NCBI RefSeq assembly: GCF_963853765.1
Contig: NC_088856.1
Location: forward strand, 14,942,001-15,006,000
Source: Magallana gigas
Lineage: Eukaryota
Direction of reading: 5' to 3'
Length of the DNA: 64,000 bases
This document shows, piece by piece, positions 1 to 8,004 of the stretch (position 1 is the first letter of the stretch; every line of letters starts with the position of its first letter). The notes beneath the pieces were generated by a model. It did not search any database, was not told the origin of the DNA, and saw only the letters and a list, made by a program, of their open reading frames with translations. The position numbers and the translations under genes were made by a program.

Positions 1-98
1 AGAAACCCTGCAAAATAGAAACATTACACTCACATTATTATTGCACATTTCTGTTAAATATCGATCTGCATGGAATCTATTCTAATCATTAATGTATA

Positions 99-136
<38 letters not shown>

Positions 137-2438
137 GAACATTAGGTATGATAAAGTCAGCTTAATGGAGTCATAATACAAACAATCTGGACAATGTACA
201 ATAATACATGTAGATCCTGTATAAATAAAATCCATTTTTCCCCCTAGGAACTCGGATAGCCGATTGATGCCAATACTTACAAGAGCAGACTTTAATCACC
301 GCTCCTGCACATATATAGGGACTCAACGTTACGCAAGCAGGGATGACCGCACACCTACGCAACTCAACAGGTACCAACGTTAACGCAAGCAGGGATGACC
401 GCACACTTGCGCCAACAGCTCAGTCTAACGCAAGCAGGGAGTGCCGCACACTTGCGCTAGAAAGGGCAGAACACCAGCAGGGATGACCACACACTAGTGC
501 TCCACCGCAACCACCACCAATACAAGCAGGTATGCCCGCACACTTGTATTAATGCGATACAGGGCAGGGATGACCACACACTCTGTATCGTAGGTTAGAA
601 AACACGGAGATTATATAGAGCAGGAATGTCCACACACTCTATCTATCCGTACCTGTTCAAATTTAACCCCAAAAACAGTCGCTCGTCATAATGCAATAGA
701 CACTGTCCCTATATATGTGCCGGCCTAAAATAATTCATAGTATCTAAAAATTGGAAATCAAAAATAAACAAACTTATCCGGCCTAACCCAAAACTACTTA
801 TGCAGAACAACTTATATACATTGAATATTTATTATTGTATAAAAATAATCGTCACAATAATTGGTTAACAGTGGATGCATTAATTAAAATAATCAAGAAT
901 CGATAAATCAAAGGCAATAACTCAATACAGTAATACAAAAAGATTCTAATGAAAAAATAGCTGCCTGCTTCAATTTTATAGTCATATCACATGTTGGGAA
1001 TGCAGTTCTCAAAAAGATCCTTTACAATTGTTTATATATGGGATATTTAGCTACATCAAACTCTGAACCTTTTTGTGAGGCCGAAGAATTGTCCTGGAGC
1101 CAAAGTCTTAACAATTATAAAAGAATCATCTTGCTGATTAGTTTCTGAGAAGAAGATTTTTAAAGATTTACTCTATATATTCCTATGTAAAACTTCAACA
1201 CCCCCCCCCCCAATGTGGCCTCACCCTACCCCCAGGGATCATGATTTTCACAACTTTAAATCTACACTACCTGAGGATACTTCCACACAAGTTTCAGCTT
1301 TCCTGGCTGATTAGTTTCTGAGAAGAAGATTTTTAAAGATTTACTCTATATTTTCCTATGTAAAACTTCGACCCCCCATTGTGCCCCACCCTATACCCAG
1401 GGGTCATGATTTTCACAACTTTGAATCTACACTGCCTGAGGATGCTTCCACACAAGTTTCAGCTTTCCTGGCTGATTAGTTTCTGAGAAGAAGATTTTTA
1501 AAGATTTACTCTATATATCCCTATGTAAAATTTTAACACCCACCCCCCAATGTGGCCTCACCCTACCCCAGGGATCATGATTTTCACAACATTGAATTTA
1601 CACTACCTGAGGATGCTTCCACACAAGTTTCAACTTTCCTGGCTGATTAGTTTCTGAGAAGAAGATTTTTAAAGATTTACTCTATATTTTCCTATGTAAA
1701 ACTTCGACCCCCCATTGTGGCCCCACCCTATACCCAGGGTTCATGATTTTCACAACTTTGAATCTACACTACCTGAGGATGCTTCCATACAAGTGTCAGC
1801 TTTCCTGGCTGATTAGTTTCTGAGAAGAAGATTTTTAAAGATTTACTCTATATATTCCTATTTAAAACTTCGACCCCCCATTGTGGCCCCACCCTACCCC
1901 CAGGGATAATGATTTTCACAACTTTGAATCTACACTACCTGAGGATGCTTCCACACAAGTTTCAGCTTTCCTGGCTGATTAGTTTCTGAGAAGAAGATTT
2001 TTTTAAAGATTACCTCTATATTTTCCTATGTAAAACTTCGACCCCCCATTGTGGCCCCATCCTACCCCCAGGGGTCATGATTTTCACAACTTTGAATCTA
2101 CACTACCTGAGGATGCTTCCATACAAGTTTCAGCTTTCCTGGCTGATTAGTTTCTGAGAAGAAGATTTTTAAAGATTTACTCTATATATTCCTATGTAAA
2201 ACTTCGACCCCCCATTGTGGCCCCACCCTACCCCCGGGGGTCATGAATTTCACAACTTTGAATCTACACTACCTGAGGATGCTGCCACACAAGTTTCAGC
2301 TTTCCTGGCTTTCTGGTTCTTGAGAAGAAGATTTTTGAAAATTTCTCGAAATTTTTCATTAATTTCTAATTATCTCACCTTGAAAACGGGTGTGGCCCTT
2401 AATTTTCACAACTTTGAATCCCCTTTGCCTAAGGATGA

Positions 2439-2470
<32 letters not shown>

Positions 2471-2575
2471 AGTTCTTGAGAAGATGTTGAAAATGTGAAA
2501 AGTTTACGGACGGACGGACGGACGGACGGACGGACAGACGGACAGACAGACAGACAGACAAAAAGTGATCAGAAT

Positions 2576-2608
<33 letters not shown>

Positions 2609-5560
2609 TAAAAAAGTAAATCTGAGCCCTGAAGGCATATAAGGCCAGCGCTCATCTCTGAGACCAGTTCAAGAGAGGGGGTGCACGCGAGCGCTCACCA
2701 AAATTCCCTATACCTGCAACACAAATTTTGGCAAGCGCTTGTGAGCACTCACTCTGCTGAACACACCTTAGGTTTCTGTGGTGCTAAGTGGATGAGAGTC
2801 ATTGCCTCCCCCTGGATGGGACACCAGTCCATCCCAAGTAAACCCCCAGCCTAAACCAGTACCCAATTTCAGCTGGATGGACTGAGACAAAGTCGATAAA
2901 GTGCTTTGTCTAAGGACACAACACAAACCATCAATAGACCACAGTGGGGCTTAAACTTTTGGCCATGGGCTACTGGCTTAACACCTTTGAGCATTGAGCT
3001 AAGTGTTTAATGTATCATATGAAGAAAATAAAATAAAACATAAAACAACTTAAGGTCTCTGTTTGCCAAAACATTTTAAAATACTGTTAACTCAGACACT
3101 GACATGTAAAGACTGGTTAATGATGAGAAATATTCATGATGACAAAAATGTTGCAAACTTCAAAAAAAGGTTCTCATTAGAACAATAAAAGATTAAACTT
3201 GGATTTATTTATGTTTCTGAATATAAACCCGAGTTGACATTTGCTTGGATAATATTAATTATGATAGTCATTGTATAATCTAAGTACAGATTCTGGACAA
3301 TTACCAATTACTAGCATTGTTATGTTGTCTGATTCTTAGGAAAGGTTTCTCATAGTGAGACAATTTAAAATGCACACTACTATAGGATATAGCAGAATTT
3401 ACATGGTATGAAATCCAGCTAGAGCAACATATCAATTACTACATTCTAGTGATGGGAAATCGGAAAATTTTCATAATCGATTATCGGAAATAATCGAAAG
3501 TGTATAATCGATTAAATAATCGAAATTTTTCAAATTATGTTTAATTGAATGAAACTCTGAACAAAAACTTGCGTCTTGCGTTGTATATACAGTAATATAT
3601 ACTTGTTTCAGTTGTTTGAAATTATTTAATATTTTTTCAAATAAATCAAATATGTTAATAAAATTTTTATATTATAACTGTAACATGTATGCACATACAA
3701 TCTTATTTACTGCACCTGGTTAGAATAAAAGAAAACTAGGAATTGTACCTTTTATAGTGACTAGGAAGTTAGGAACAAGTTCAAATTTCGAACAATAAAC
3801 ATAAACAATTTAAAATATAACAAATTAATTTGAAATTCAGAGTTCAAATCCTATTTAAAAAACATTAAACCAAAACAATTTAACATTTAAAAATCGTGAC
3901 TAGAAAGTTTACTACTGGCCGAGTCACATGACATACCATTTCAATGTTTCACCAATACATTTCAAGGTTTTTATTCAAGAAAATGAACAAGTCAACAATC
4001 CAAAATACTTCCACACCGTGGATTTAAAGTTTGTATTTGGACATGGAAATATTTCCTGAGTCATGTTATTGTTGGGATCTTGATAAGTGGCATTTGCCTC
4101 GTACGTGGGGCTTGCACATCGCGCTGCCATTTTGTATAAACCTATTTTCGTTTCTGATGTTTGTATTAAATTTTTTTTTTAAATAATCGATTATGAAAAT
4201 CTTAATTGATCATCGACATCGGGAGACATTTAGCGACCAACTTTCGATTGTCTGTGATAATCGGCCCATCACCACTACATTCTCTTTTTTTAAAGCACTT
4301 ACCTGCACGGTACTGACTGTGTAAAGCTTGCGTATACTGGCTTCATACTGAGCAGCTGAGGAGCCTGGGATAGACCTACACACACATAAGAGAAACCATT
4401 TTACTAAAATGTAATTAGAATAGCAGTCATTAAATAAATAGCAAATATTAAACAGTCATGCAGCTAGACTACCTCCCAACTAAGTAATGTGATTATCTTT
4501 GCTAGAGCCCTAGCCCAGGGTGACACAACCAGTCTTGGATGACAACAGGTCAACTCAAGAATTTCTCCTACATTCTCAGAAATATTTATTATTCTCTAGC
4601 CTCCAACAAGTTAACATTTTAGCTTTTAGAGGTATGAAAACTAAATCATGATGTGAATACAGTTGTTTACTGATGCATATGATTGTAATCATATCAAATA
4701 GATTGGCGAGACATTTCCTGTACGAGAGTTAGGAGAAGTCAATATGGAATAGGGCATGTTTATTGATGAGAACAGTCAGTAAGTGTACTTGAGAATGTCC
4801 ATGGTATTCTGATGAGAAGTGTAACAAGAATCTCTTCGTCTCTTCTCTTGAAAAGAGAAGGATTAGCATATATAATCACATTTGGATTCCAAAAAGGCAC
4901 AAATATGGTCATCATTTTTAACGTTGATTACTTACACAAAAAGCTATATATCTAATCTTAAGCTCATATTCACAATGCACGTCTTTGTAAATTTTCCTGA
5001 GAATACCATATTACAGAATTTTTCAAATATTGTCTTGATGTACAGTATGTGATGAGACAATGAATTTTCTACTTCTAACACTTGATGGCTTGATTTTGTA
5101 CAAAAACTATTCAGAAAGAAAAGTATTCTTTTCGTCCATGTTATGATCAATTGTCAATTTCTTCCAAGTGAATGGATTAATTCAACATACTTCCACTTTC
5201 ACATTCACCTTTTTTTCCGCTAAATAAGCATATTCATGCCCTATAAGTTTCCGGCACGATAACATCTCAAATATTATTCCGATTGATCTGATCTTTGCCA
5301 TTTTACTTTCGATAATGAAAATTTCCTTTCAAATAAAAATATGCATTTTTTAAAAACAATGCCATTTGAAAGTAATCATTAACGATATTTAGCCATATTT
5401 ACTTATCAAGCCAGAACGTCCATGGGGTGTTCAGTGGGACCCCCGACTGTTCGGAGGAGTGGATTTCGTTGATGGCTGCACGTTGGAGTTGTGGACTTCC
5501 GACAGGACGAGCCTCGGCCGATTTTACGCAGTCGACTGACTGAAGGCTCGATACCGCCAT
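1..5560 (-). CDS. EIF4E3: Eukaryotic translation initiation factor 4E type 3, 5' part (exons 5560-5403, 4375-4303, and exon 3 starting at 7 and running off the window)
   Basis: Spliced translation MAVSSLQ...GVPLNTPWTFWLDK|SIPGSSAAQYEASIRKLYTVSTVQ|GF(W) matches the eIF4E3 N-terminal motifs (GVPLHSxWTFWLDR, KKIYTVQTVQ.FW). GT-AG sites and phases (2, 0) are consistent. An upstream in-frame ATG at 5587 is an alternative start. Confidence 0.9.
307..720 (-). other. Array of 7 stem-loops with a conserved 16-nt loop, enclosed by a 16-bp perfect inverted repeat (candidate structured RNA or novel element)
   Basis: Loops CAGGNANNNCCRCACA at 338, 390, 435, 478, 527, 565 and 621, each closed by a different complementary stem. 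IR gcacatatatagggac (307-322) / gtccctatatatgtgc (705-720). Confidence 0.75.
1130..2480 (+). repeat. Tandem ~166-170 bp satellite monomers (Cg170-like), about 8 copies
   Basis: gattagtttctgagaagaagatttttaaagatttactctatat...cacaactttgaatctacactacctgaggatgcttccacacaagtttcagctttcctggct recurs about every 165-173 bp. Confidence 0.9.
2625..2990 (-). mobile_element. SINE fragment (bivalve Meta/Nin-domain-like), interrupted by a ~110-bp hairpin insert
   Basis: gccagcgctcatctctg...gtttctgtggtgctaag...ccccctggatgggacaccagtccatc...tacccaatttcagctgg...gtgctttgtctaaggacacaac resembles conserved mollusc SINE central domains (recalled family similarity, not searched). Confidence 0.5.
3447..4274. mobile_element. 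hAT-type non-autonomous DNA transposon (MITE)
   Basis: TIRs tagtgatggg / cccatcacca (9/10 match) and an exact 8-bp TSD ctacattc at 3439-3446 and 4275-4282. Confidence 0.9.
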
Positions 5561-6484
5561 CACGTACCAAGACCGCAATCGGGTCATGTGATCAAAACAA
5601 ATGACGTAGAATTATCGTTCGGAATAACCTCGGGTCAATAATTTCGCGCCATCTTTCAATAGTTTTACGGACAAGTGGGCGGATTATGTTGGGTGACACG
5701 GGGACTATTGTAAATACATACAAACGCTGTATTAGTTAACTTTTAGAGTGATCAGTAAATATTAATATTTTCAGATAAAAGTACAGTTATTGATAAATAA
5801 ATATTCATGTAAAATGCAAAGCGTTTAAGCCAACGATTTCTATTGACTGATGCACTTTTGGGGCACTTACCTAATGGCCAAACTTCCGATCGAAATAAGG
5901 AATAATCATATCTTTCCCAATTATTTATTGCCTAACAGCGTACCGCGATGTGTTATAATAGAGGGTTTACAACTGATATGACTCTAAGTCATGAGTGCGA
6001 ATCTCGCTGTGCCTTTTTATAATTTTTACCTTTTCCAAATATTTTAAAAACATTTTATTTGGTCAATTGACAAATATTGTAAAATTTGAAAATTCTACAA
6101 CGATGAAAGGAAGCTTATTTTAATTAAAATGTACTTTTGTCCATGTGAATATCGACAGGAGTCCCATCATAGTAGTACCACCTTAAATTGAACATGTCAC
6201 AAATACATATTTCATCGTAATTCATTAAACAATAGCACACCCTGTCTTTAATTAGTATTTTTTGTGTCTTAGCGAATTACATACTGTAATTTATATTAAA
6301 GTATTCTTCCCAGTTTTATTATTCAATGTGTTTCAACTAAATCTAAAAATAGTTTAGAATTCTAAACTTATATCTATTTAGAGAGCTATAAAACCTTCTT
6401 TGTTATAAATAATCACCAATATTTAATCTTAAATTTGTCTTGAGTTTACAACTCTCAATTGGAACATCTACTATATTTCATATA

Positions 6485-6633
6485 NNNNNNNNNNNNNNNN
6501 NNNNNNNNNNNNNNNNNNNNNNNNNNNNNNNNNNNNNNNNNNNNNNNNNNNNNNNNNNNNNNNNNNNNNNNNNNNNNNNNNNNNNNNNNNNNNNNNNNNN
6601 NNNNNNNNNNNNNNNNNNNNNNNNNNNNNNNNN
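6485..6633. other. Assembly gap (N run); further gaps at 43418-43547 and 52956-53112
   Basis: Direct reading. Confidence 0.99.
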
Positions 6634-6795
6634 TAGAAATCTAGTAGTAACGGGTAAACAACTTTCATTCAAAGATTTCTAAGATACAAACTCAACTGTT
6701 ACTGTATAATATCAATGGATTGCATGTACAATTCTCAATTTAACCACATTATGTACAAGATAATCCTATAAATTACATTAAGAATCTTGGTATAT

Positions 6796-8004
6796 TCATT
6801 CCTCATTACACACAAAGTCTGACGGTTTCAACTCATCCCAAGCTTTCCCTGCGACTTTCGGCGGTCCACTACACACAATCAGGTGCGGATCCTGAATAAC
6901 GTAAGGCGCGTGGTCCATTTTCTCTCTCAGCCACCTCAGATTGCAGTCACAGTTCCAAGGATTTGAATCAATGAACAGAGTGTTTAGTTTGGTCAGGTGA
7001 CTCGTGTCTAACACCTCGGGCTTTAGGGTAGACAACTGGTTGCTTTGGAGCCACAGGGACCCCATACTCTTCAGCGGATACAGAGCACCCGGCTCTATGT
7101 GGCTGATATTGTTTAAATCTAGGTAGAGGGTGTCTACACTGGAGAGGCCTACAAAGGTATTGTTTGTCAGTGTAGATTTGATGTGGTCCTGCATGAAATC
7201 CAGTAAAGTAAGCTTGTCAAGGCCGTGGAACGCATTGTCCTCAATGGTTTCTACCTGTCCCTGCCAGAAAGCCAAGGTCTGAAGATTGACCAGGTCTTTG
7301 AAGCCAAAGGAAGGCAGGGTTTTTATCTGATTGCCCACAAAGCAGAGATGTTGGATGCATGTAGGGATATCATTGAGAATACTTTGCATTTGGTTGAACC
7401 TGAAATCAATGGAGTTGATGCTTCTACACTTCGAAAAAGCATTTGGTGGAAAACTTGCGTCGGTTAGCTTGTTGAATCCGATGTAGAGTGTTGTCATTGC
7501 AACAAGAGGGTCAAACGCCCCGGGTTGGATTTTGGATATTTTATTGTTTGAGAGGTCAAGATAAACGATCTTTGGATAAAGATTAAAGCTGTCTGATTGA
7601 ATTGTTTCCAAGTTTCCTTGCATCATCCTGAAGGTGTCCATGATTTTCGGAAGGACTTTCGGAATCGTAGTGTAGTCCGTCATGGACAGATCGACATCCG
7701 TTAGACTGGGAAGGTCAAGGGCACCTGGTTCGATTGACCCTTCCTTTAAACGGGCACCCGACGCGTCCAGCGCATTCAGATTAACGAGCTTTGATAATGA
7801 ACCCTTTTTGATTTCGCGGATTGGATTATCGCCGATGTACAGGATTTTGGTGTCGGTCGGAATATTATCCGGGATCTCTGATATTCCCGTTCCGTTGCAG
7901 AAAACTTGTCCCGGCGGCCTGCAGTAACAGGGGGACGGGCATGACTGCGCATCGACTGTCACAGTCCACCACACACAACAGACAATCAAGAGGAGAGTGG
8001 ACAT
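6796..8004 (-). CDS. Secreted leucine-rich repeat protein (signal peptide, LRRNT, ~11-12 LRRs, LRRCT; no TM), 402 aa, single coding exon
   Basis: MSTLLLIVCCVWWTVTVDA signal peptide; CPSPCYC LRRNT; LxxLxLxxNxI repeats; NPWNCDCNLRWL...C.GP LRRCT. Acceptor at 8014 and a probable 5'UTR exon donor at 8559. Confidence 0.92.
   Translation of the reverse strand: MSTLLLIVCCVWWTVTVDAQSCPSPCYCRPPGQVFCNGTGISEIPDNIPTDTKILYIGDNPIREIKKGSLSKLVNLNALDASGARLKEGSIEPGALDLPSLTDVDLSMTDYTTIPKVLPKIMDTFRMMQGNLETIQSDSFNLYPKIVYLDLSNNKISKIQPGAFDPLVAMTTLYIGFNKLTDASFPPNAFSKCRSINSIDFRFNQMQSILNDIPTCIQHLCFVGNQIKTLPSFGFKDLVNLQTLAFWQGQVETIEDNAFHGLDKLTLLDFMQDHIKSTLTNNTFVGLSSVDTLYLDLNNISHIEPGALYPLKSMGSLWLQSNQLSTLKPEVLDTSHLTKLNTLFIDSNPWNCDCNLRWLREKMDHAPYVIQDPHLIVCSGPPKVAGKAWDELKPSDFVCNEE

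What the first reader, a model, noticed from the sequence alone, without database searches (positions are those of the whole stretch)
307..720. Seven covarying stem-loops with a conserved 16-nt loop inside a perfect 16-bp inverted repeat: candidate new structured-RNA or protein-binding array
Seen: loops CAGGGATGACCGCACA (338, 390), CAGGGAGTGCCGCACA (435), CAGGGATGACCACACA (478, 565), CAGGTATGCCCGCACA (527) and CAGGAATGTCCACACA (621), consensus CAGG-N-A-NNN-CC-R-CACA, spaced 38-56 nt apart. Each loop is closed by G-C and a 8-13 bp stem whose sequence changes while pairing is kept (cgcaag/cttgcg, aatacaag/cttgtatt, cgatacag/ctgtatcg, atagag/ctctat). About ten stem mismatches in units 1-5 are A.C on the + strand, which are G.U wobbles on the - strand; only two G.T pairs (unit 6) point the other way. 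The invariant GG..CC could form a mini-stem inside the loop. The array is clamped by gcacatatatagggac/gtccctatatatgtgc. Inference: simple tandem amplification does not produce stem covariation, so folding appears selected, most likely as minus-strand RNA, which is the EIF4E3 pre-mRNA strand (intron 2). Possible roles are a multivalent protein-binding sponge or scaffold, or a packaging/replication signal of an unrecognised mobile element nested in a HINE. I recognise no known family.
Basis: partly seen in the sequence, partly recalled or inferred. Interest (0 to 1): 0.9.

Follow-up and report, generated by a model that had tools for sequence, protein, structure and literature searches.

The report
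Retrotransposon LTR hairpin array inside a HINE
The seven stem-loops are real, but they are a decayed piece of the long terminal repeat of an oyster Ty3/gypsy retrotransposon that was trapped in, and copied about a thousand times by, a known Helitron-type element; they are of moderate interest as a likely RNA signal of the retrotransposon, not a new host RNA.

Summary
Seven hairpin units lie at 330-643, inside a perfect 16-bp inverted repeat. The motif occurs 7 times in the window against 0.07 expected by chance.

The array is not a unit bounded by that inverted repeat.
- Window 248-972 (minus strand) is a solo-LTR fragment of a Ty3/gypsy retrotransposon.
- It sits in a Helitron-N2_CGi-type HINE spanning about 101-2612.
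- The HINE-LTR junction has at least 996 candidate copies in this 564-Mb oyster genome.
- The autonomous element (782-bp LTRs, one 1696-aa gag-pol ORF) has only 7 copies.

The hairpins fold on the LTR sense strand, which is the window's minus strand.
- Summed unit energy is -113.7 kcal/mol on the sense strand against -59.4 on the antisense strand.
- Variable stems hold 13 G.U pairs against 2 A.C.
- On that strand the "16-nt loop" folds further into a bulged stem with a 4-nt loop.

Covariation is strong among the seven units (0 of 500 shuffles reach it). Among 56 genomic copies there is none. HINE-borne copies, including this one, are decaying.

Best reading: a cis-acting RNA hairpin array of the retrotransposon's genomic RNA, perhaps a repeated Gag-binding signal. 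That function is inferred. The U3/R/U5 borders were not mapped. No Rfam match. New variant of a known kind; moderate interest.

The parts
101..2612 (-). Whole non-autonomous Helentron (HINE, Helitron-N2_CGi group). Its 5' end is at about 2612 and its 3' end at 101/102.
   Evidence: Similarity among 30 genomic copies starts at window 97-103 and runs to about 2612. The left junctions of 40+ copies diverge just before AAACAAGAGGCCC. Box1, Box2 and Box3 of PMC8268682 Table S3 match.
103..141 (-). HINE 3' terminal box (Box 2): palindrome GGCCCATGGGCC at 109-120 and 3' subterminal inverted repeat GCTCACCTGAG at 124-137.
   Evidence: Sequence read. Matches the Box 2 string in the supplement of PMC8268682.
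248..972 (-). Solo-LTR fragment of a Ty3/gypsy retrotransposon. The LTR 5' end (TGAAGCAGG...) is at 972. The last ~55 nt of the LTR are deleted at about 248.
   Evidence: About 90% identical to positions 1-727 of the 782-bp LTR of the full element in L061. Alignment A1. HINE variants L072, L080 and L082 keep the complete LTR end followed by AAATCATCC.
973..976 (-). AAAT, one copy of the 4-bp target-site duplication of the original LTR-element insertion into the HINE. The other copy was lost in the deletion.
   Evidence: The 5' flank reads ...TAAAAT|TGAAGC. In L080 and L082 the 3' flank reads GTTACA|AAATCATCC.
705..723 (-). Upstream inverted-repeat arm in LTR sense (GCACATATATAGGGAC). It holds the TATA-like box that is the candidate LTR promoter.
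   Evidence: It sits where relatives have a canonical TATA box, 460-700 nt before the LTR 3' end.
613..643 (-). Its apical motif is damaged in this copy (GGACATTCC).
557..587 (-). Hairpin unit 6
519..549 (-). Hairpin unit 5. Its apical motif is damaged in this copy (GGGCATACC).
470..500 (-). Hairpin unit 4
427..457 (-). Hairpin unit 3 (4-nt loop CACU)
382..412 (-). Hairpin unit 2
330..360 (-). Hairpin unit 1 (last in LTR sense)
304..322 (-). Downstream inverted-repeat arm in LTR sense (GTCCCTATATATGTGC).
291..296 (-). ATTAAA on the LTR sense strand, 9 nt after the downstream arm. Candidate polyadenylation signal; not verified.
   Evidence: Sequence. No poly(A) loose ends were seen.
1133..2355 (-). 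Central 166-bp tandem repeats of the HINE (7.2 copies, 91% matches).
2400..2500 (-). [quoted passage not shown]
2506..2559 (-). HINE microsatellite: (ACGG)n on the plus strand, (GTCC)n in element orientation.
   Evidence: Matches the GTCY-type microsatellites described for Cg_HINE.
2570..2610 (-). HINE 5' terminal box (Box 1): 5' subterminal inverted repeat plus its complementary inverted repeat.

Best explanation
Shown: window 248-972, read on the minus strand, is a truncated solo LTR of a young, low-copy Ty3/gypsy retrotransposon. That element once integrated into a Helitron-N2_CGi-type HINE with target-site duplication AAAT. It collapsed to a solo LTR and was then amplified passively with the HINE. 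The seven stem-loops belong to the LTR. They lie between a TATA-like box (upstream arm of the 16-bp inverted repeat) and ATTAAA plus the LTR 3' end.

Shown: the hairpins are stable only on the LTR sense strand. Their stems are unit-specific and compensated. Their apical part, GUGUG(C/U)GG-NNNN-CCCUGC, is constant.

Inferred: they are kept by selection in the retrotransposon lineage as RNA hairpins of the genomic RNA. This holds wherever the transcription start lies: U3 would place them in the 3' UTR, R at both ends, and U5 in the 5' leader. My preferred role is a multivalent binding array for the element's own Gag (one CCHC knuckle), that is a packaging-type 'repetitive structural motif'. I rate that specific role at about 0.3.

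The copy in this window is a non-functional relic. Two of its seven apical motifs are already broken.
For: Identity of the elements:
- The same 782-bp unit occurs as same-strand pairs about 6.1 kb or 2.7 kb apart.
- L061 has LTRs at 583-1364 and 6717-7498 that are 99.5% alike, with TG..CA ends.
- L061 carries a 1696-aa ORF with zf-CCHC, protease, RVT_1, RNase H and integrase domains.
- A PBS-like TGGTGGCAGCGGTGGGAT lies 5 nt after the LTR, a purine tract lies before the 3' LTR, and the target-site duplication is CATG.
- The HINE identity rests, and the AAAT duplication.
- Copy numbers: 7 internal regions, at least 383 LTR 3' ends, at least 996 HINE-LTR junction candidates.

Strand of folding:
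- Summed hairpin energy is -113.7 kcal/mol sense against -59.4 antisense.
- The whole array folds to -176.9 (z -5.44) sense against -126.1 (z -2.90) antisense.
- Variable stems hold 13 G.U against 2 A.C (p 0.007), and each apical motif has 2 invariant G.U pairs.

Covariation among units:
- Cognate arms pair at 66 of 70 positions, against 42.9 +/- 5.1 over all 5040 arm permutations. Only the true arrangement reaches 66.
- 11 of 12 variable pairs change on both sides. The covariation score is 0.591 against 0.186 shuffled, with 0 of 500 shuffles as high.

Constraint in the LTR lineage:
- Substitutions shared by LTR-type copies keep pairing in 14 of 20 cases. Singletons do so in 19 of 59 and HINE-lineage shared changes in 13 of 36.
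- LTR copies keep 5-7 intact motifs, mostly 6-7. HINE copies keep 1-5, mean 3.3.
- The 3.5-kb non-autonomous derivative keeps all 7 hairpins in both LTRs.

Position in the LTR: relatives with about 50% Pol identity share the LTR end GCACGTTACA and a similar PBS. They have a canonical TATA box 460-700 nt before the LTR end, where the oyster upstream arm lies at 521 nt.

RNA: poly(A) RNA-seq reads cover the array, mostly in the sense direction if the libraries are dUTP-type.
Against: - There is no covariation beyond shuffles among 56 genomic copies: 95.0% of cells pair against 94.9% shuffled. The covariation evidence therefore rests on seven paralogous units of one family.
- The shared-versus-singleton contrast weakens to p 0.19 when restricted to transitions and when fixed differences are dropped.
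- The U3/R/U5 borders were not mapped. No read start or end pile-ups and no poly(A) tails were seen. Most reads come from HINE copies, shown by the loose ends at L061 1306.
- Library strandedness is assumed, not checked.
- Relatives lack this apical motif, so conservation beyond this oyster family is not shown.
- No protein-binding evidence exists.
- The downstream arm is also a good TATA box in the sense direction, so a U3 or enhancer position cannot be excluded.
Confidence: 0.6

Rival explanations
1. DNA-level element. The constant 18-nt core is a repeated transcription-factor site (enhancer or promoter-proximal array) in the LTR, and the hairpin potential is incidental.
For: Tandem arrays of factor sites in LTRs or 5' UTRs of retroelements are common (own knowledge; for example the Su(Hw) sites of Drosophila gypsy). 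The core contains GGTCA, which resembles a nuclear-receptor half-site. The downstream arm is a perfect TATAWAWR in the sense direction, which would place the array in U3. Relatives carry other short repeats in the same LTR region.
Against: A double-stranded DNA site does not explain unit-specific compensated flanks. It does not explain the strand-specific G.U excess. The 4-nt loop that contains TCA varies (UCAU, CACU, ACUU) while the flanking GG/CC pairs never do.
Confidence: 0.15
2. Neutral by-product. A palindromic unit was duplicated in tandem, and arm-to-arm template switching by reverse transcriptase or polymerase keeps the arms complementary without any function.
For: Template switching at quasi-palindromes can create and perfect hairpins (own knowledge). 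Among genomic copies there is no covariation signal. The constraint test is weak once stratified.
Against: Templated correction gives perfect Watson-Crick arms. It does not give 13 G.U against 2 A.C, nor a constant bulged apical motif with two G.U pairs. The array has been kept at seven units with intact motifs across LTR subfamilies that are 87-100% alike.
Confidence: 0.15
3. One reading: an independent unit clamped by the 16-bp inverted repeat. It would act as a MITE-like element, or as a structured RNA or protein sponge of the host pre-mRNA.
For: The 16-bp arms are 97.5% paired across 56 copies. The stretch is transcribed.
Against: No copy ends at the arms, and no target-site duplication flanks them. 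The stretch has about a thousand dispersed copies with decaying hairpins. Nothing ties it to one host gene.
Confidence: 0.03
4. The hairpins serve the HINE, as single-stranded DNA structures used in rolling-circle transposition.
For: Helitron-type elements move through single-stranded DNA and use terminal hairpins (own knowledge). The composite is very successful, with at least 996 candidates.
Against: HINE-lineage changes mostly break the stems, 23 of 36 shared changes. Motif counts fall to 1-5 per copy. Described Cg_HINE right flanks are about 60 bp and lack this insert. The array predates capture, since it is intact in the autonomous element.
Confidence: 0.03

Closest known systems
Packaging signals built of repeated stem-loops ('repetitive structural motifs') in RNA viruses: the concept in PMC8206606 (seen). 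Alphavirus stem-loops with a constant GGG and the multi-hairpin retroviral Psi are cited from own knowledge.
   Same: Several short hairpins in a row, with a constant apical or bulge motif and variable stems, located on the genomic sense RNA. The presumed ligand is the capsid or Gag protein.
   Different: No binding or packaging data here. The array lies inside the LTR rather than between PBS and gag. Seven near-regular units of 38-56 nt. No sequence or Rfam similarity.
Hairpins in the retroviral R region (HIV-1 and HIV-2 TAR, poly(A) hairpin, HTLV RexRE; own knowledge)
   Same: Structured RNA within the LTR-derived part of the transcript. HIV-2 TAR has duplicated stem-loops with a conserved loop.
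   Different: It is not shown that the oyster array is in R. The element has no transactivator gene; it has a single gag-pol ORF.
Tandem repeats inside LTR retrotransposons that seed satellite DNA (mentioned in PMC8268682)
   Same: A short tandem array carried within an LTR element and spread through the genome.
   Different: The units here are hairpins with compensated stems and have not expanded into long arrays. The motif is absent from the C. gigas satellitome supplement text.
Cg_HINE / Helitron-N2_CGi non-autonomous Helentrons (PMC7492417, PMC8268682)
   Same: The outer element has the defining subterminal inverted repeats, 3' palindrome, microsatellite and 166-bp central repeats, and it matches Box 1-3.
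   Different: This subfamily carries an extra stretch of about 1 kb between the central repeats and the 3' box. That stretch includes the solo LTR. The papers describe a right flank of about 60 bp.
MITE / foldback element
   Same: A short non-coding repeat with an inverted repeat and internal palindromes.
   Different: The inverted repeat is internal to the mobile unit, and no target-site duplication flanks it. It moves only as part of an LTR element or a HINE.

Membership tests
Ty3/gypsy (Metaviridae) LTR retrotransposon: the LTR | Two long direct repeats flanking an internal region | tested here: met
   L061 583-1364 and 6717-7498 are 99.5% alike. Further pairs occur in L062, L064 and L065.
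Ty3/gypsy (Metaviridae) LTR retrotransposon: the LTR | LTR ends TG...CA and a 4-6 bp target-site duplication | tested here: met
   Ends are TGAAGC...GTTACA. Target-site duplication is CATG at L061 and AAAT at the insertion into the HINE.
Ty3/gypsy (Metaviridae) LTR retrotransposon: the LTR | Primer-binding site next to the 5' LTR and polypurine tract next to the 3' LTR | tested here: inconclusive
   A TGG-initiated 18-mer lies 5 nt after the LTR. It has 178 exact genomic hits and is shared with relatives. GAGGTGGGGGTAA precedes the 3' LTR. The priming tRNA was not identified.
Ty3/gypsy (Metaviridae) LTR retrotransposon: the LTR | gag-pol with domain order protease, RT, RNase H, integrase | tested here: met
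   Pfam hits in that order on the 1696-aa ORF.
HINE (non-autonomous Helentron), Helitron-N2_CGi group | 5' subterminal inverted repeat with nearby complementary repeat; 3' subterminal inverted repeat followed by a palindrome | tested here: met
   Window 2570-2610 and 103-141 match Box 1 and Box 2.
HINE (non-autonomous Helentron), Helitron-N2_CGi group | Microsatellite plus central satellite-like tandem repeats | tested here: met
   (ACGG)13.5 at 2506-2559 and 166-bp x 7.2 at 1133-2355.
HINE (non-autonomous Helentron), Helitron-N2_CGi group | Insertion without target duplication, next to T | tested here: inconclusive
   The left junctions of 40+ copies show A or T before AAACAAGAGG. The right junctions were not tabulated.
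MITE | The inverted repeats are the ends of the mobile unit and are flanked by a target-site duplication | tested here: not met
   All copies extend beyond both arms, and there is no duplication at the arms.
Any curated RNA family (Rfam 15) | Covariance-model match | tested here: not met
   No relevant hit at E <= 1 on window 1-3000. No hit at all on L061 560-1500.
Retroelement cis-acting RNA signal (packaging-type hairpin array) | Structure kept by compensatory change on the genomic sense strand | tested here: met
   Met among the seven units. Not met among the genomic copies.
Retroelement cis-acting RNA signal (packaging-type hairpin array) | Specific binding by Gag or nucleocapsid, and requirement for packaging | not testable with these tools
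   No RNA-protein tool is available, and no published data were found.
Retroelement cis-acting RNA signal (packaging-type hairpin array) | Location in the transcribed part of the element | tested here: inconclusive
   Any LTR position is in the genomic RNA at least once. The TATA position by analogy with relatives suggests R/U5. The reads did not define a transcription start or a poly(A) site.

The most novel reading that the evidence does not exclude
The array is a repeated-hairpin recognition signal for a Metaviridae Gag; I found none described in two literature searches. The 16-bp inverted repeat would act as a switch. Its upstream arm is in U3 and its downstream arm in R. The clamp could then form only in the 3' copy of the RNA, next to ATTAAA, and so distinguish the 3' end from the 5' end for polyadenylation or packaging.
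Probability: 0.2. Interest if true: 0.6.

Novelty: new variant of a known kind. Interest (0 to 1): 0.35.

Why it matters
The finding turns a supposed new structured RNA into an explained composite: an LTR fragment that hitch-hikes in a Helitron-type element. That is a clear case of one transposon amplifying a piece of another about a thousandfold.

The hairpin array is still a clean candidate cis-acting RNA signal of an invertebrate Ty3/gypsy element. It has strong within-array covariation and a strand-specific wobble signature, and to my knowledge packaging or export signals are poorly known for this group of elements. It is easy to test in vitro.

The array also warns annotators. About 660 exact copies of the 18-nt motif in this genome could be mistaken for a host RNA family.

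Tried and rejected
- Rfam scans of the window and of the intact LTR gave nothing relevant.
- Covariation among 56 genomic copies showed no signal beyond shuffles.
- ADAR-type editing as the source of the G.U bias: A>G (12) is not above T>C (14) among LTR-copy singletons. Rejected.
- MITE reading: rejected.
- A scan of JGI metagenome contigs for the 18-nt motif gave 34 contigs with one hit each and no arrays. This is chance level.
- Relatives found through the Pol protein have at most 54% identity. The six loci fetched do not carry the motif, so no cross-species covariation test was possible. One relative (P0014) returned no DNA.
- RNA-seq laying, the one call allowed, did not define a transcription start or a poly(A) site. 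The depth step at L061 1167 is explained by the 95% likeness filter acting on HINE-derived reads.
- The supplements of the two C. gigas repeat papers do not contain the hairpin motif.
- A mistyped reading frame was corrected.
- Not attempted: the identity of the priming tRNA and the EIF4E3 intron claim.
Full report
**1. Observation**

A 31-nt core recurs seven times at 330-643 with spacings of 52, 45, 43, 49, 38 and 56 nt. A 19-nt inverted repeat (16 nt perfect) lies at 304-322 / 705-723. Tandem Repeats Finder also sees the first units as a ~45-nt array. The degenerate motif GTGYGGNNNNCCCTGC hits the seven units, all on the minus strand, plus one stray hit, against 0.07 expected hits per 64 kb.

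The stretch folds better on the minus strand: -170.1 kcal/mol (z -4.43) against -120.7 (z -2.83) on the plus strand. On the minus strand the "16-nt loop" is not a loop. It continues the stem through G-C, U.G, G.U, a bulged U, G-C, a bulged C and two G-C pairs, and ends in a 4-nt loop.

**2. What the stretch belongs to**

The genome is 564 Mb, with hits to this repeat on ten contigs (C1-C10), and the runs that hold the sequence are labelled as oyster samples. A search of it with 250-780 returned 435 candidates at 91-100% identity. All of them covered the whole query, so they run beyond both arms of the inverted repeat.

Comparing the first 6 kb of the window with 30 copies gave two results.
- A common unit runs from about 100 to about 2612.
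- A minority of loci share only 248-972.

*The outer unit is a known kind of element.* It is a non-autonomous Helentron (HINE) lying on the minus strand. Its features are:
- a 5' subterminal inverted repeat with its complementary repeat at 2570-2610;
- an (ACGG)n microsatellite at 2506-2559;
- 7.2 copies of a 166-bp central repeat at 1133-2355;
- a 3' subterminal repeat (124-137) and the palindrome GGCCCATGGGCC (109-120).

This is the architecture described for Cg_HINE (PMC7492417). [quoted passage not shown] In more than 40 copies the flanks diverge just before AAACAAGAGGCCC, so the 3' end is at window 101/102.

*The inner unit is an LTR.* Outside the HINE, the 248-972 stretch is part of a 782-bp unit that begins with TG and ends with CA (alignment A1). 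Its end-specific 103 nt has at least 383 candidates, many of them 100% identical. These occur as same-strand pairs about 6.1 kb or about 2.7 kb apart.

One such pair (L061) has these features:
- two 782-bp repeats that are 99.5% alike;
- between them a single 1696-aa ORF with CCHC knuckle, aspartic protease, RVT_1, RNase H, and integrase zinc-finger and core domains, in that order;
- a TGG-initiated 18-mer 5 nt after the 5' repeat and a purine tract before the 3' repeat;
- a CATG target-site duplication.

This is a Ty3/gypsy LTR retrotransposon. Its sense strand is the window's minus strand. Only 7 internal regions exist in the genome, six of them at 98-100% identity. A 3.5-kb deleted derivative keeps the LTRs, the PBS region and the PPT region.

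**3. How the LTR got into the HINE**

HINE variants L072, L080 and L082 carry the complete LTR 3' end, followed by AAATCATCC. On the other side the HINE reads ...TAAAAT before TGAAGC. The LTR is therefore flanked by an AAAT duplication.

The history follows from this.
1. The element integrated into a HINE, between its central repeats and its 3' box.
2. It recombined to a solo LTR.
3. It was then multiplied with the HINE.

The window's type lost the last ~55 nt of the LTR and some adjacent HINE sequence. Its junction has at least 996 candidates. Three copies are 98% identical to the window's over the 531-nt query.

**4. Anatomy of the array in the intact LTR (L061 coordinates)**

| Feature | L061 position |
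|---|---|
| AT-rich part with CCAAT motifs | 583-835 |
| Upstream arm GCACATATATAGGGAC | 841-856 |
| Seven hairpins | about 905-1230 |
| Downstream arm GTCCCTATATATGTGC | 1236-1251 |
| ATTAAA | 1260-1265 |
| LTR end | 1364 |

Each hairpin has 9-14 unit-specific pairs closing the constant apical part, GUGUG(C/U)GG-NNNN-CCCUGC. The 4-nt loop differs in two units (CACU and ACUU), while the GG/CC pairs never vary.

**5. Is folding more than an accident?**

Four lines of evidence bear on this.

*Strand.* The seven units sum to -113.7 kcal/mol on the sense strand and -59.4 on the antisense strand. On the antisense strand, units 4 and 1 fold no better than shuffled sequence. The whole array gives z -5.44 on the sense strand and -2.90 on the antisense strand. 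The variable stems contain 13 G.U pairs and only 2 A.C oppositions (p 0.007), and each apical motif has two invariant G.U pairs.

*Covariation among units.* The cognate 5' and 3' arms pair at 66 of 70 positions. The mean over all 5040 ways of re-pairing the arms is 42.9 +/- 5.1, and only the true arrangement reaches 66. On an ungapped alignment of nine units, 11 of the 12 variable pairs change on both sides. The covariation score is 0.591 against 0.186 for shuffles (0 of 500 as high) and at most 0.167 for slid partners.

*Among 56 distinct genomic copies.* The structure is 95% paired, but it shows no covariation beyond shuffles. This is expected for dead copies that are about 90% alike.

*Lineage contrast.*
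- Stem substitutions shared by two or more LTR-type copies keep pairing in 14 of 20 cases. Singletons do so in 19 of 59 and HINE-lineage shared changes in 13 of 36. Fisher p is 0.004 and 0.025.
- The contrast is only suggestive. Restricted to transitions, and without fixed differences, it falls to 9:2 against 34:23 (p 0.19).
- LTR copies keep 5-7 intact motifs, mostly 6-7. HINE copies keep 1-5, mean 3.3.
- In the window copy, units 5 and 7 are already damaged.
- A>G is not in excess among singletons, so RNA editing does not explain the wobble bias.

**6. Where in the transcript?**

Relatives found through Pol are at most 54% identical. They include a Pinctada imbricata genomic copy and several environmental contigs. 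They share the LTR end GCACGTTACA and a similar PBS.

They have a canonical TATA box far upstream of the LTR end: 576 nt in Pinctada, 463 nt in L089 and 706 nt in L090. The oyster upstream arm lies at 521 nt. This suggests a long R-U5 that contains the array.

None of the relatives has the oyster apical motif. They carry other short repeats in that region.

Three poly(A) RNA-seq runs and one contig set cover the array. Coverage is mostly in the sense direction, if the first mate is antisense as in dUTP libraries. Most of these reads come from HINE copies, because the loose end at L061 1306 continues into HINE sequence. No start or end pile-ups and no poly(A) tails were reported.

The U3/R/U5 borders therefore remain unmapped. 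Any position within the LTR is still present at least once in the genomic RNA.

**7. Mechanism**

The best-supported statement is that the hairpins are RNA structures of the retrotransposon's sense transcript, kept by selection in the replicating lineage. I give this about 0.65.

Their form is several short hairpins with a constant bulged apex and free stems. That form matches the "repetitive structural motifs" proposed to mediate selective genome packaging in RNA viruses (PMC8206606), and it resembles retroviral Psi hairpins (own knowledge). The element encodes a Gag with one CCHC knuckle. I therefore favour a multivalent Gag-binding signal, at about 0.3. Export, stability or poly(A) control remain open. 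All of these roles are inferred.

The rivals I considered:
- a DNA-level factor-site array (0.15);
- neutral palindrome maintenance by template switching (0.15);
- a role in HINE rolling-circle transposition (0.03).

**8. Comparison and novelty**

The outer element is a known family. The inner one is an ordinary Ty3/gypsy element. The composite shows one transposon amplifying a fragment of another.

The hairpin array has no Rfam counterpart. It is absent from the text of the two C. gigas repeat papers' supplements and from JGI metagenome contigs as an array. I rate it a new variant of a known kind, namely cis-acting hairpins of retroelement RNA, and of moderate interest.

The window copy itself is a relic.

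Noticed in passing
L061 (G000:C7:46272300-46281300), element at 583-7498: A full-length Ty3/gypsy copy with 99.5% identical LTRs and an uninterrupted 1696-aa gag-pol ORF. Only 7 internal regions exist genome-wide, six of them at 98-100% identity. The family looks recently active.
   Followed up: partly
L064 846-4264 and other pairs about 2.7 kb apart: A 3.5-kb non-autonomous derivative of the same element. It keeps both LTRs with all seven hairpins, the PBS, about 120 nt of the gag start, a diverged gag piece, and the PPT region.
   Followed up: partly
L089 about 755-815; L086 about 1836-1862: In two relatives, CUGAAUAAG sits in or next to the loops of short hairpins about 90-130 nt after the TATA box. 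L089 has two such hairpins with different stems. This may be a poly(A)-signal hairpin of this gypsy clade.
   Followed up: no
L086 1949-2060; L089 about 800-900: Relatives carry their own short repeat arrays in the post-TATA part of the LTR: GAGCT-type units of about 16 nt in Pinctada, and GCACTGGC repeated 5-6 times in L089. Repeated motifs in this LTR region may be a clade trait.
   Followed up: no
window 1133-2355: A 166-bp tandem array (7.2 copies, also scored as a 334-bp period). Copy number varies between HINE copies, as expected for Cg170-like central repeats.
   Followed up: partly
L061 1167-1318: Reads from three poly(A) RNA-seq runs are 4-15 times more frequent in one direction, the LTR/HINE sense if the libraries are dUTP-type. 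Most of them come from HINE copies, which are scattered in the genome in both orientations. This hints at element-driven transcription rather than intron read-through.
   Followed up: no
G000:C1:47616549, 47621848, 47627148 (L009-L011): Three identical HINE-LTR composites spaced 5.3 kb apart on one strand. The composite lies within a larger tandemly duplicated segment.
   Followed up: no
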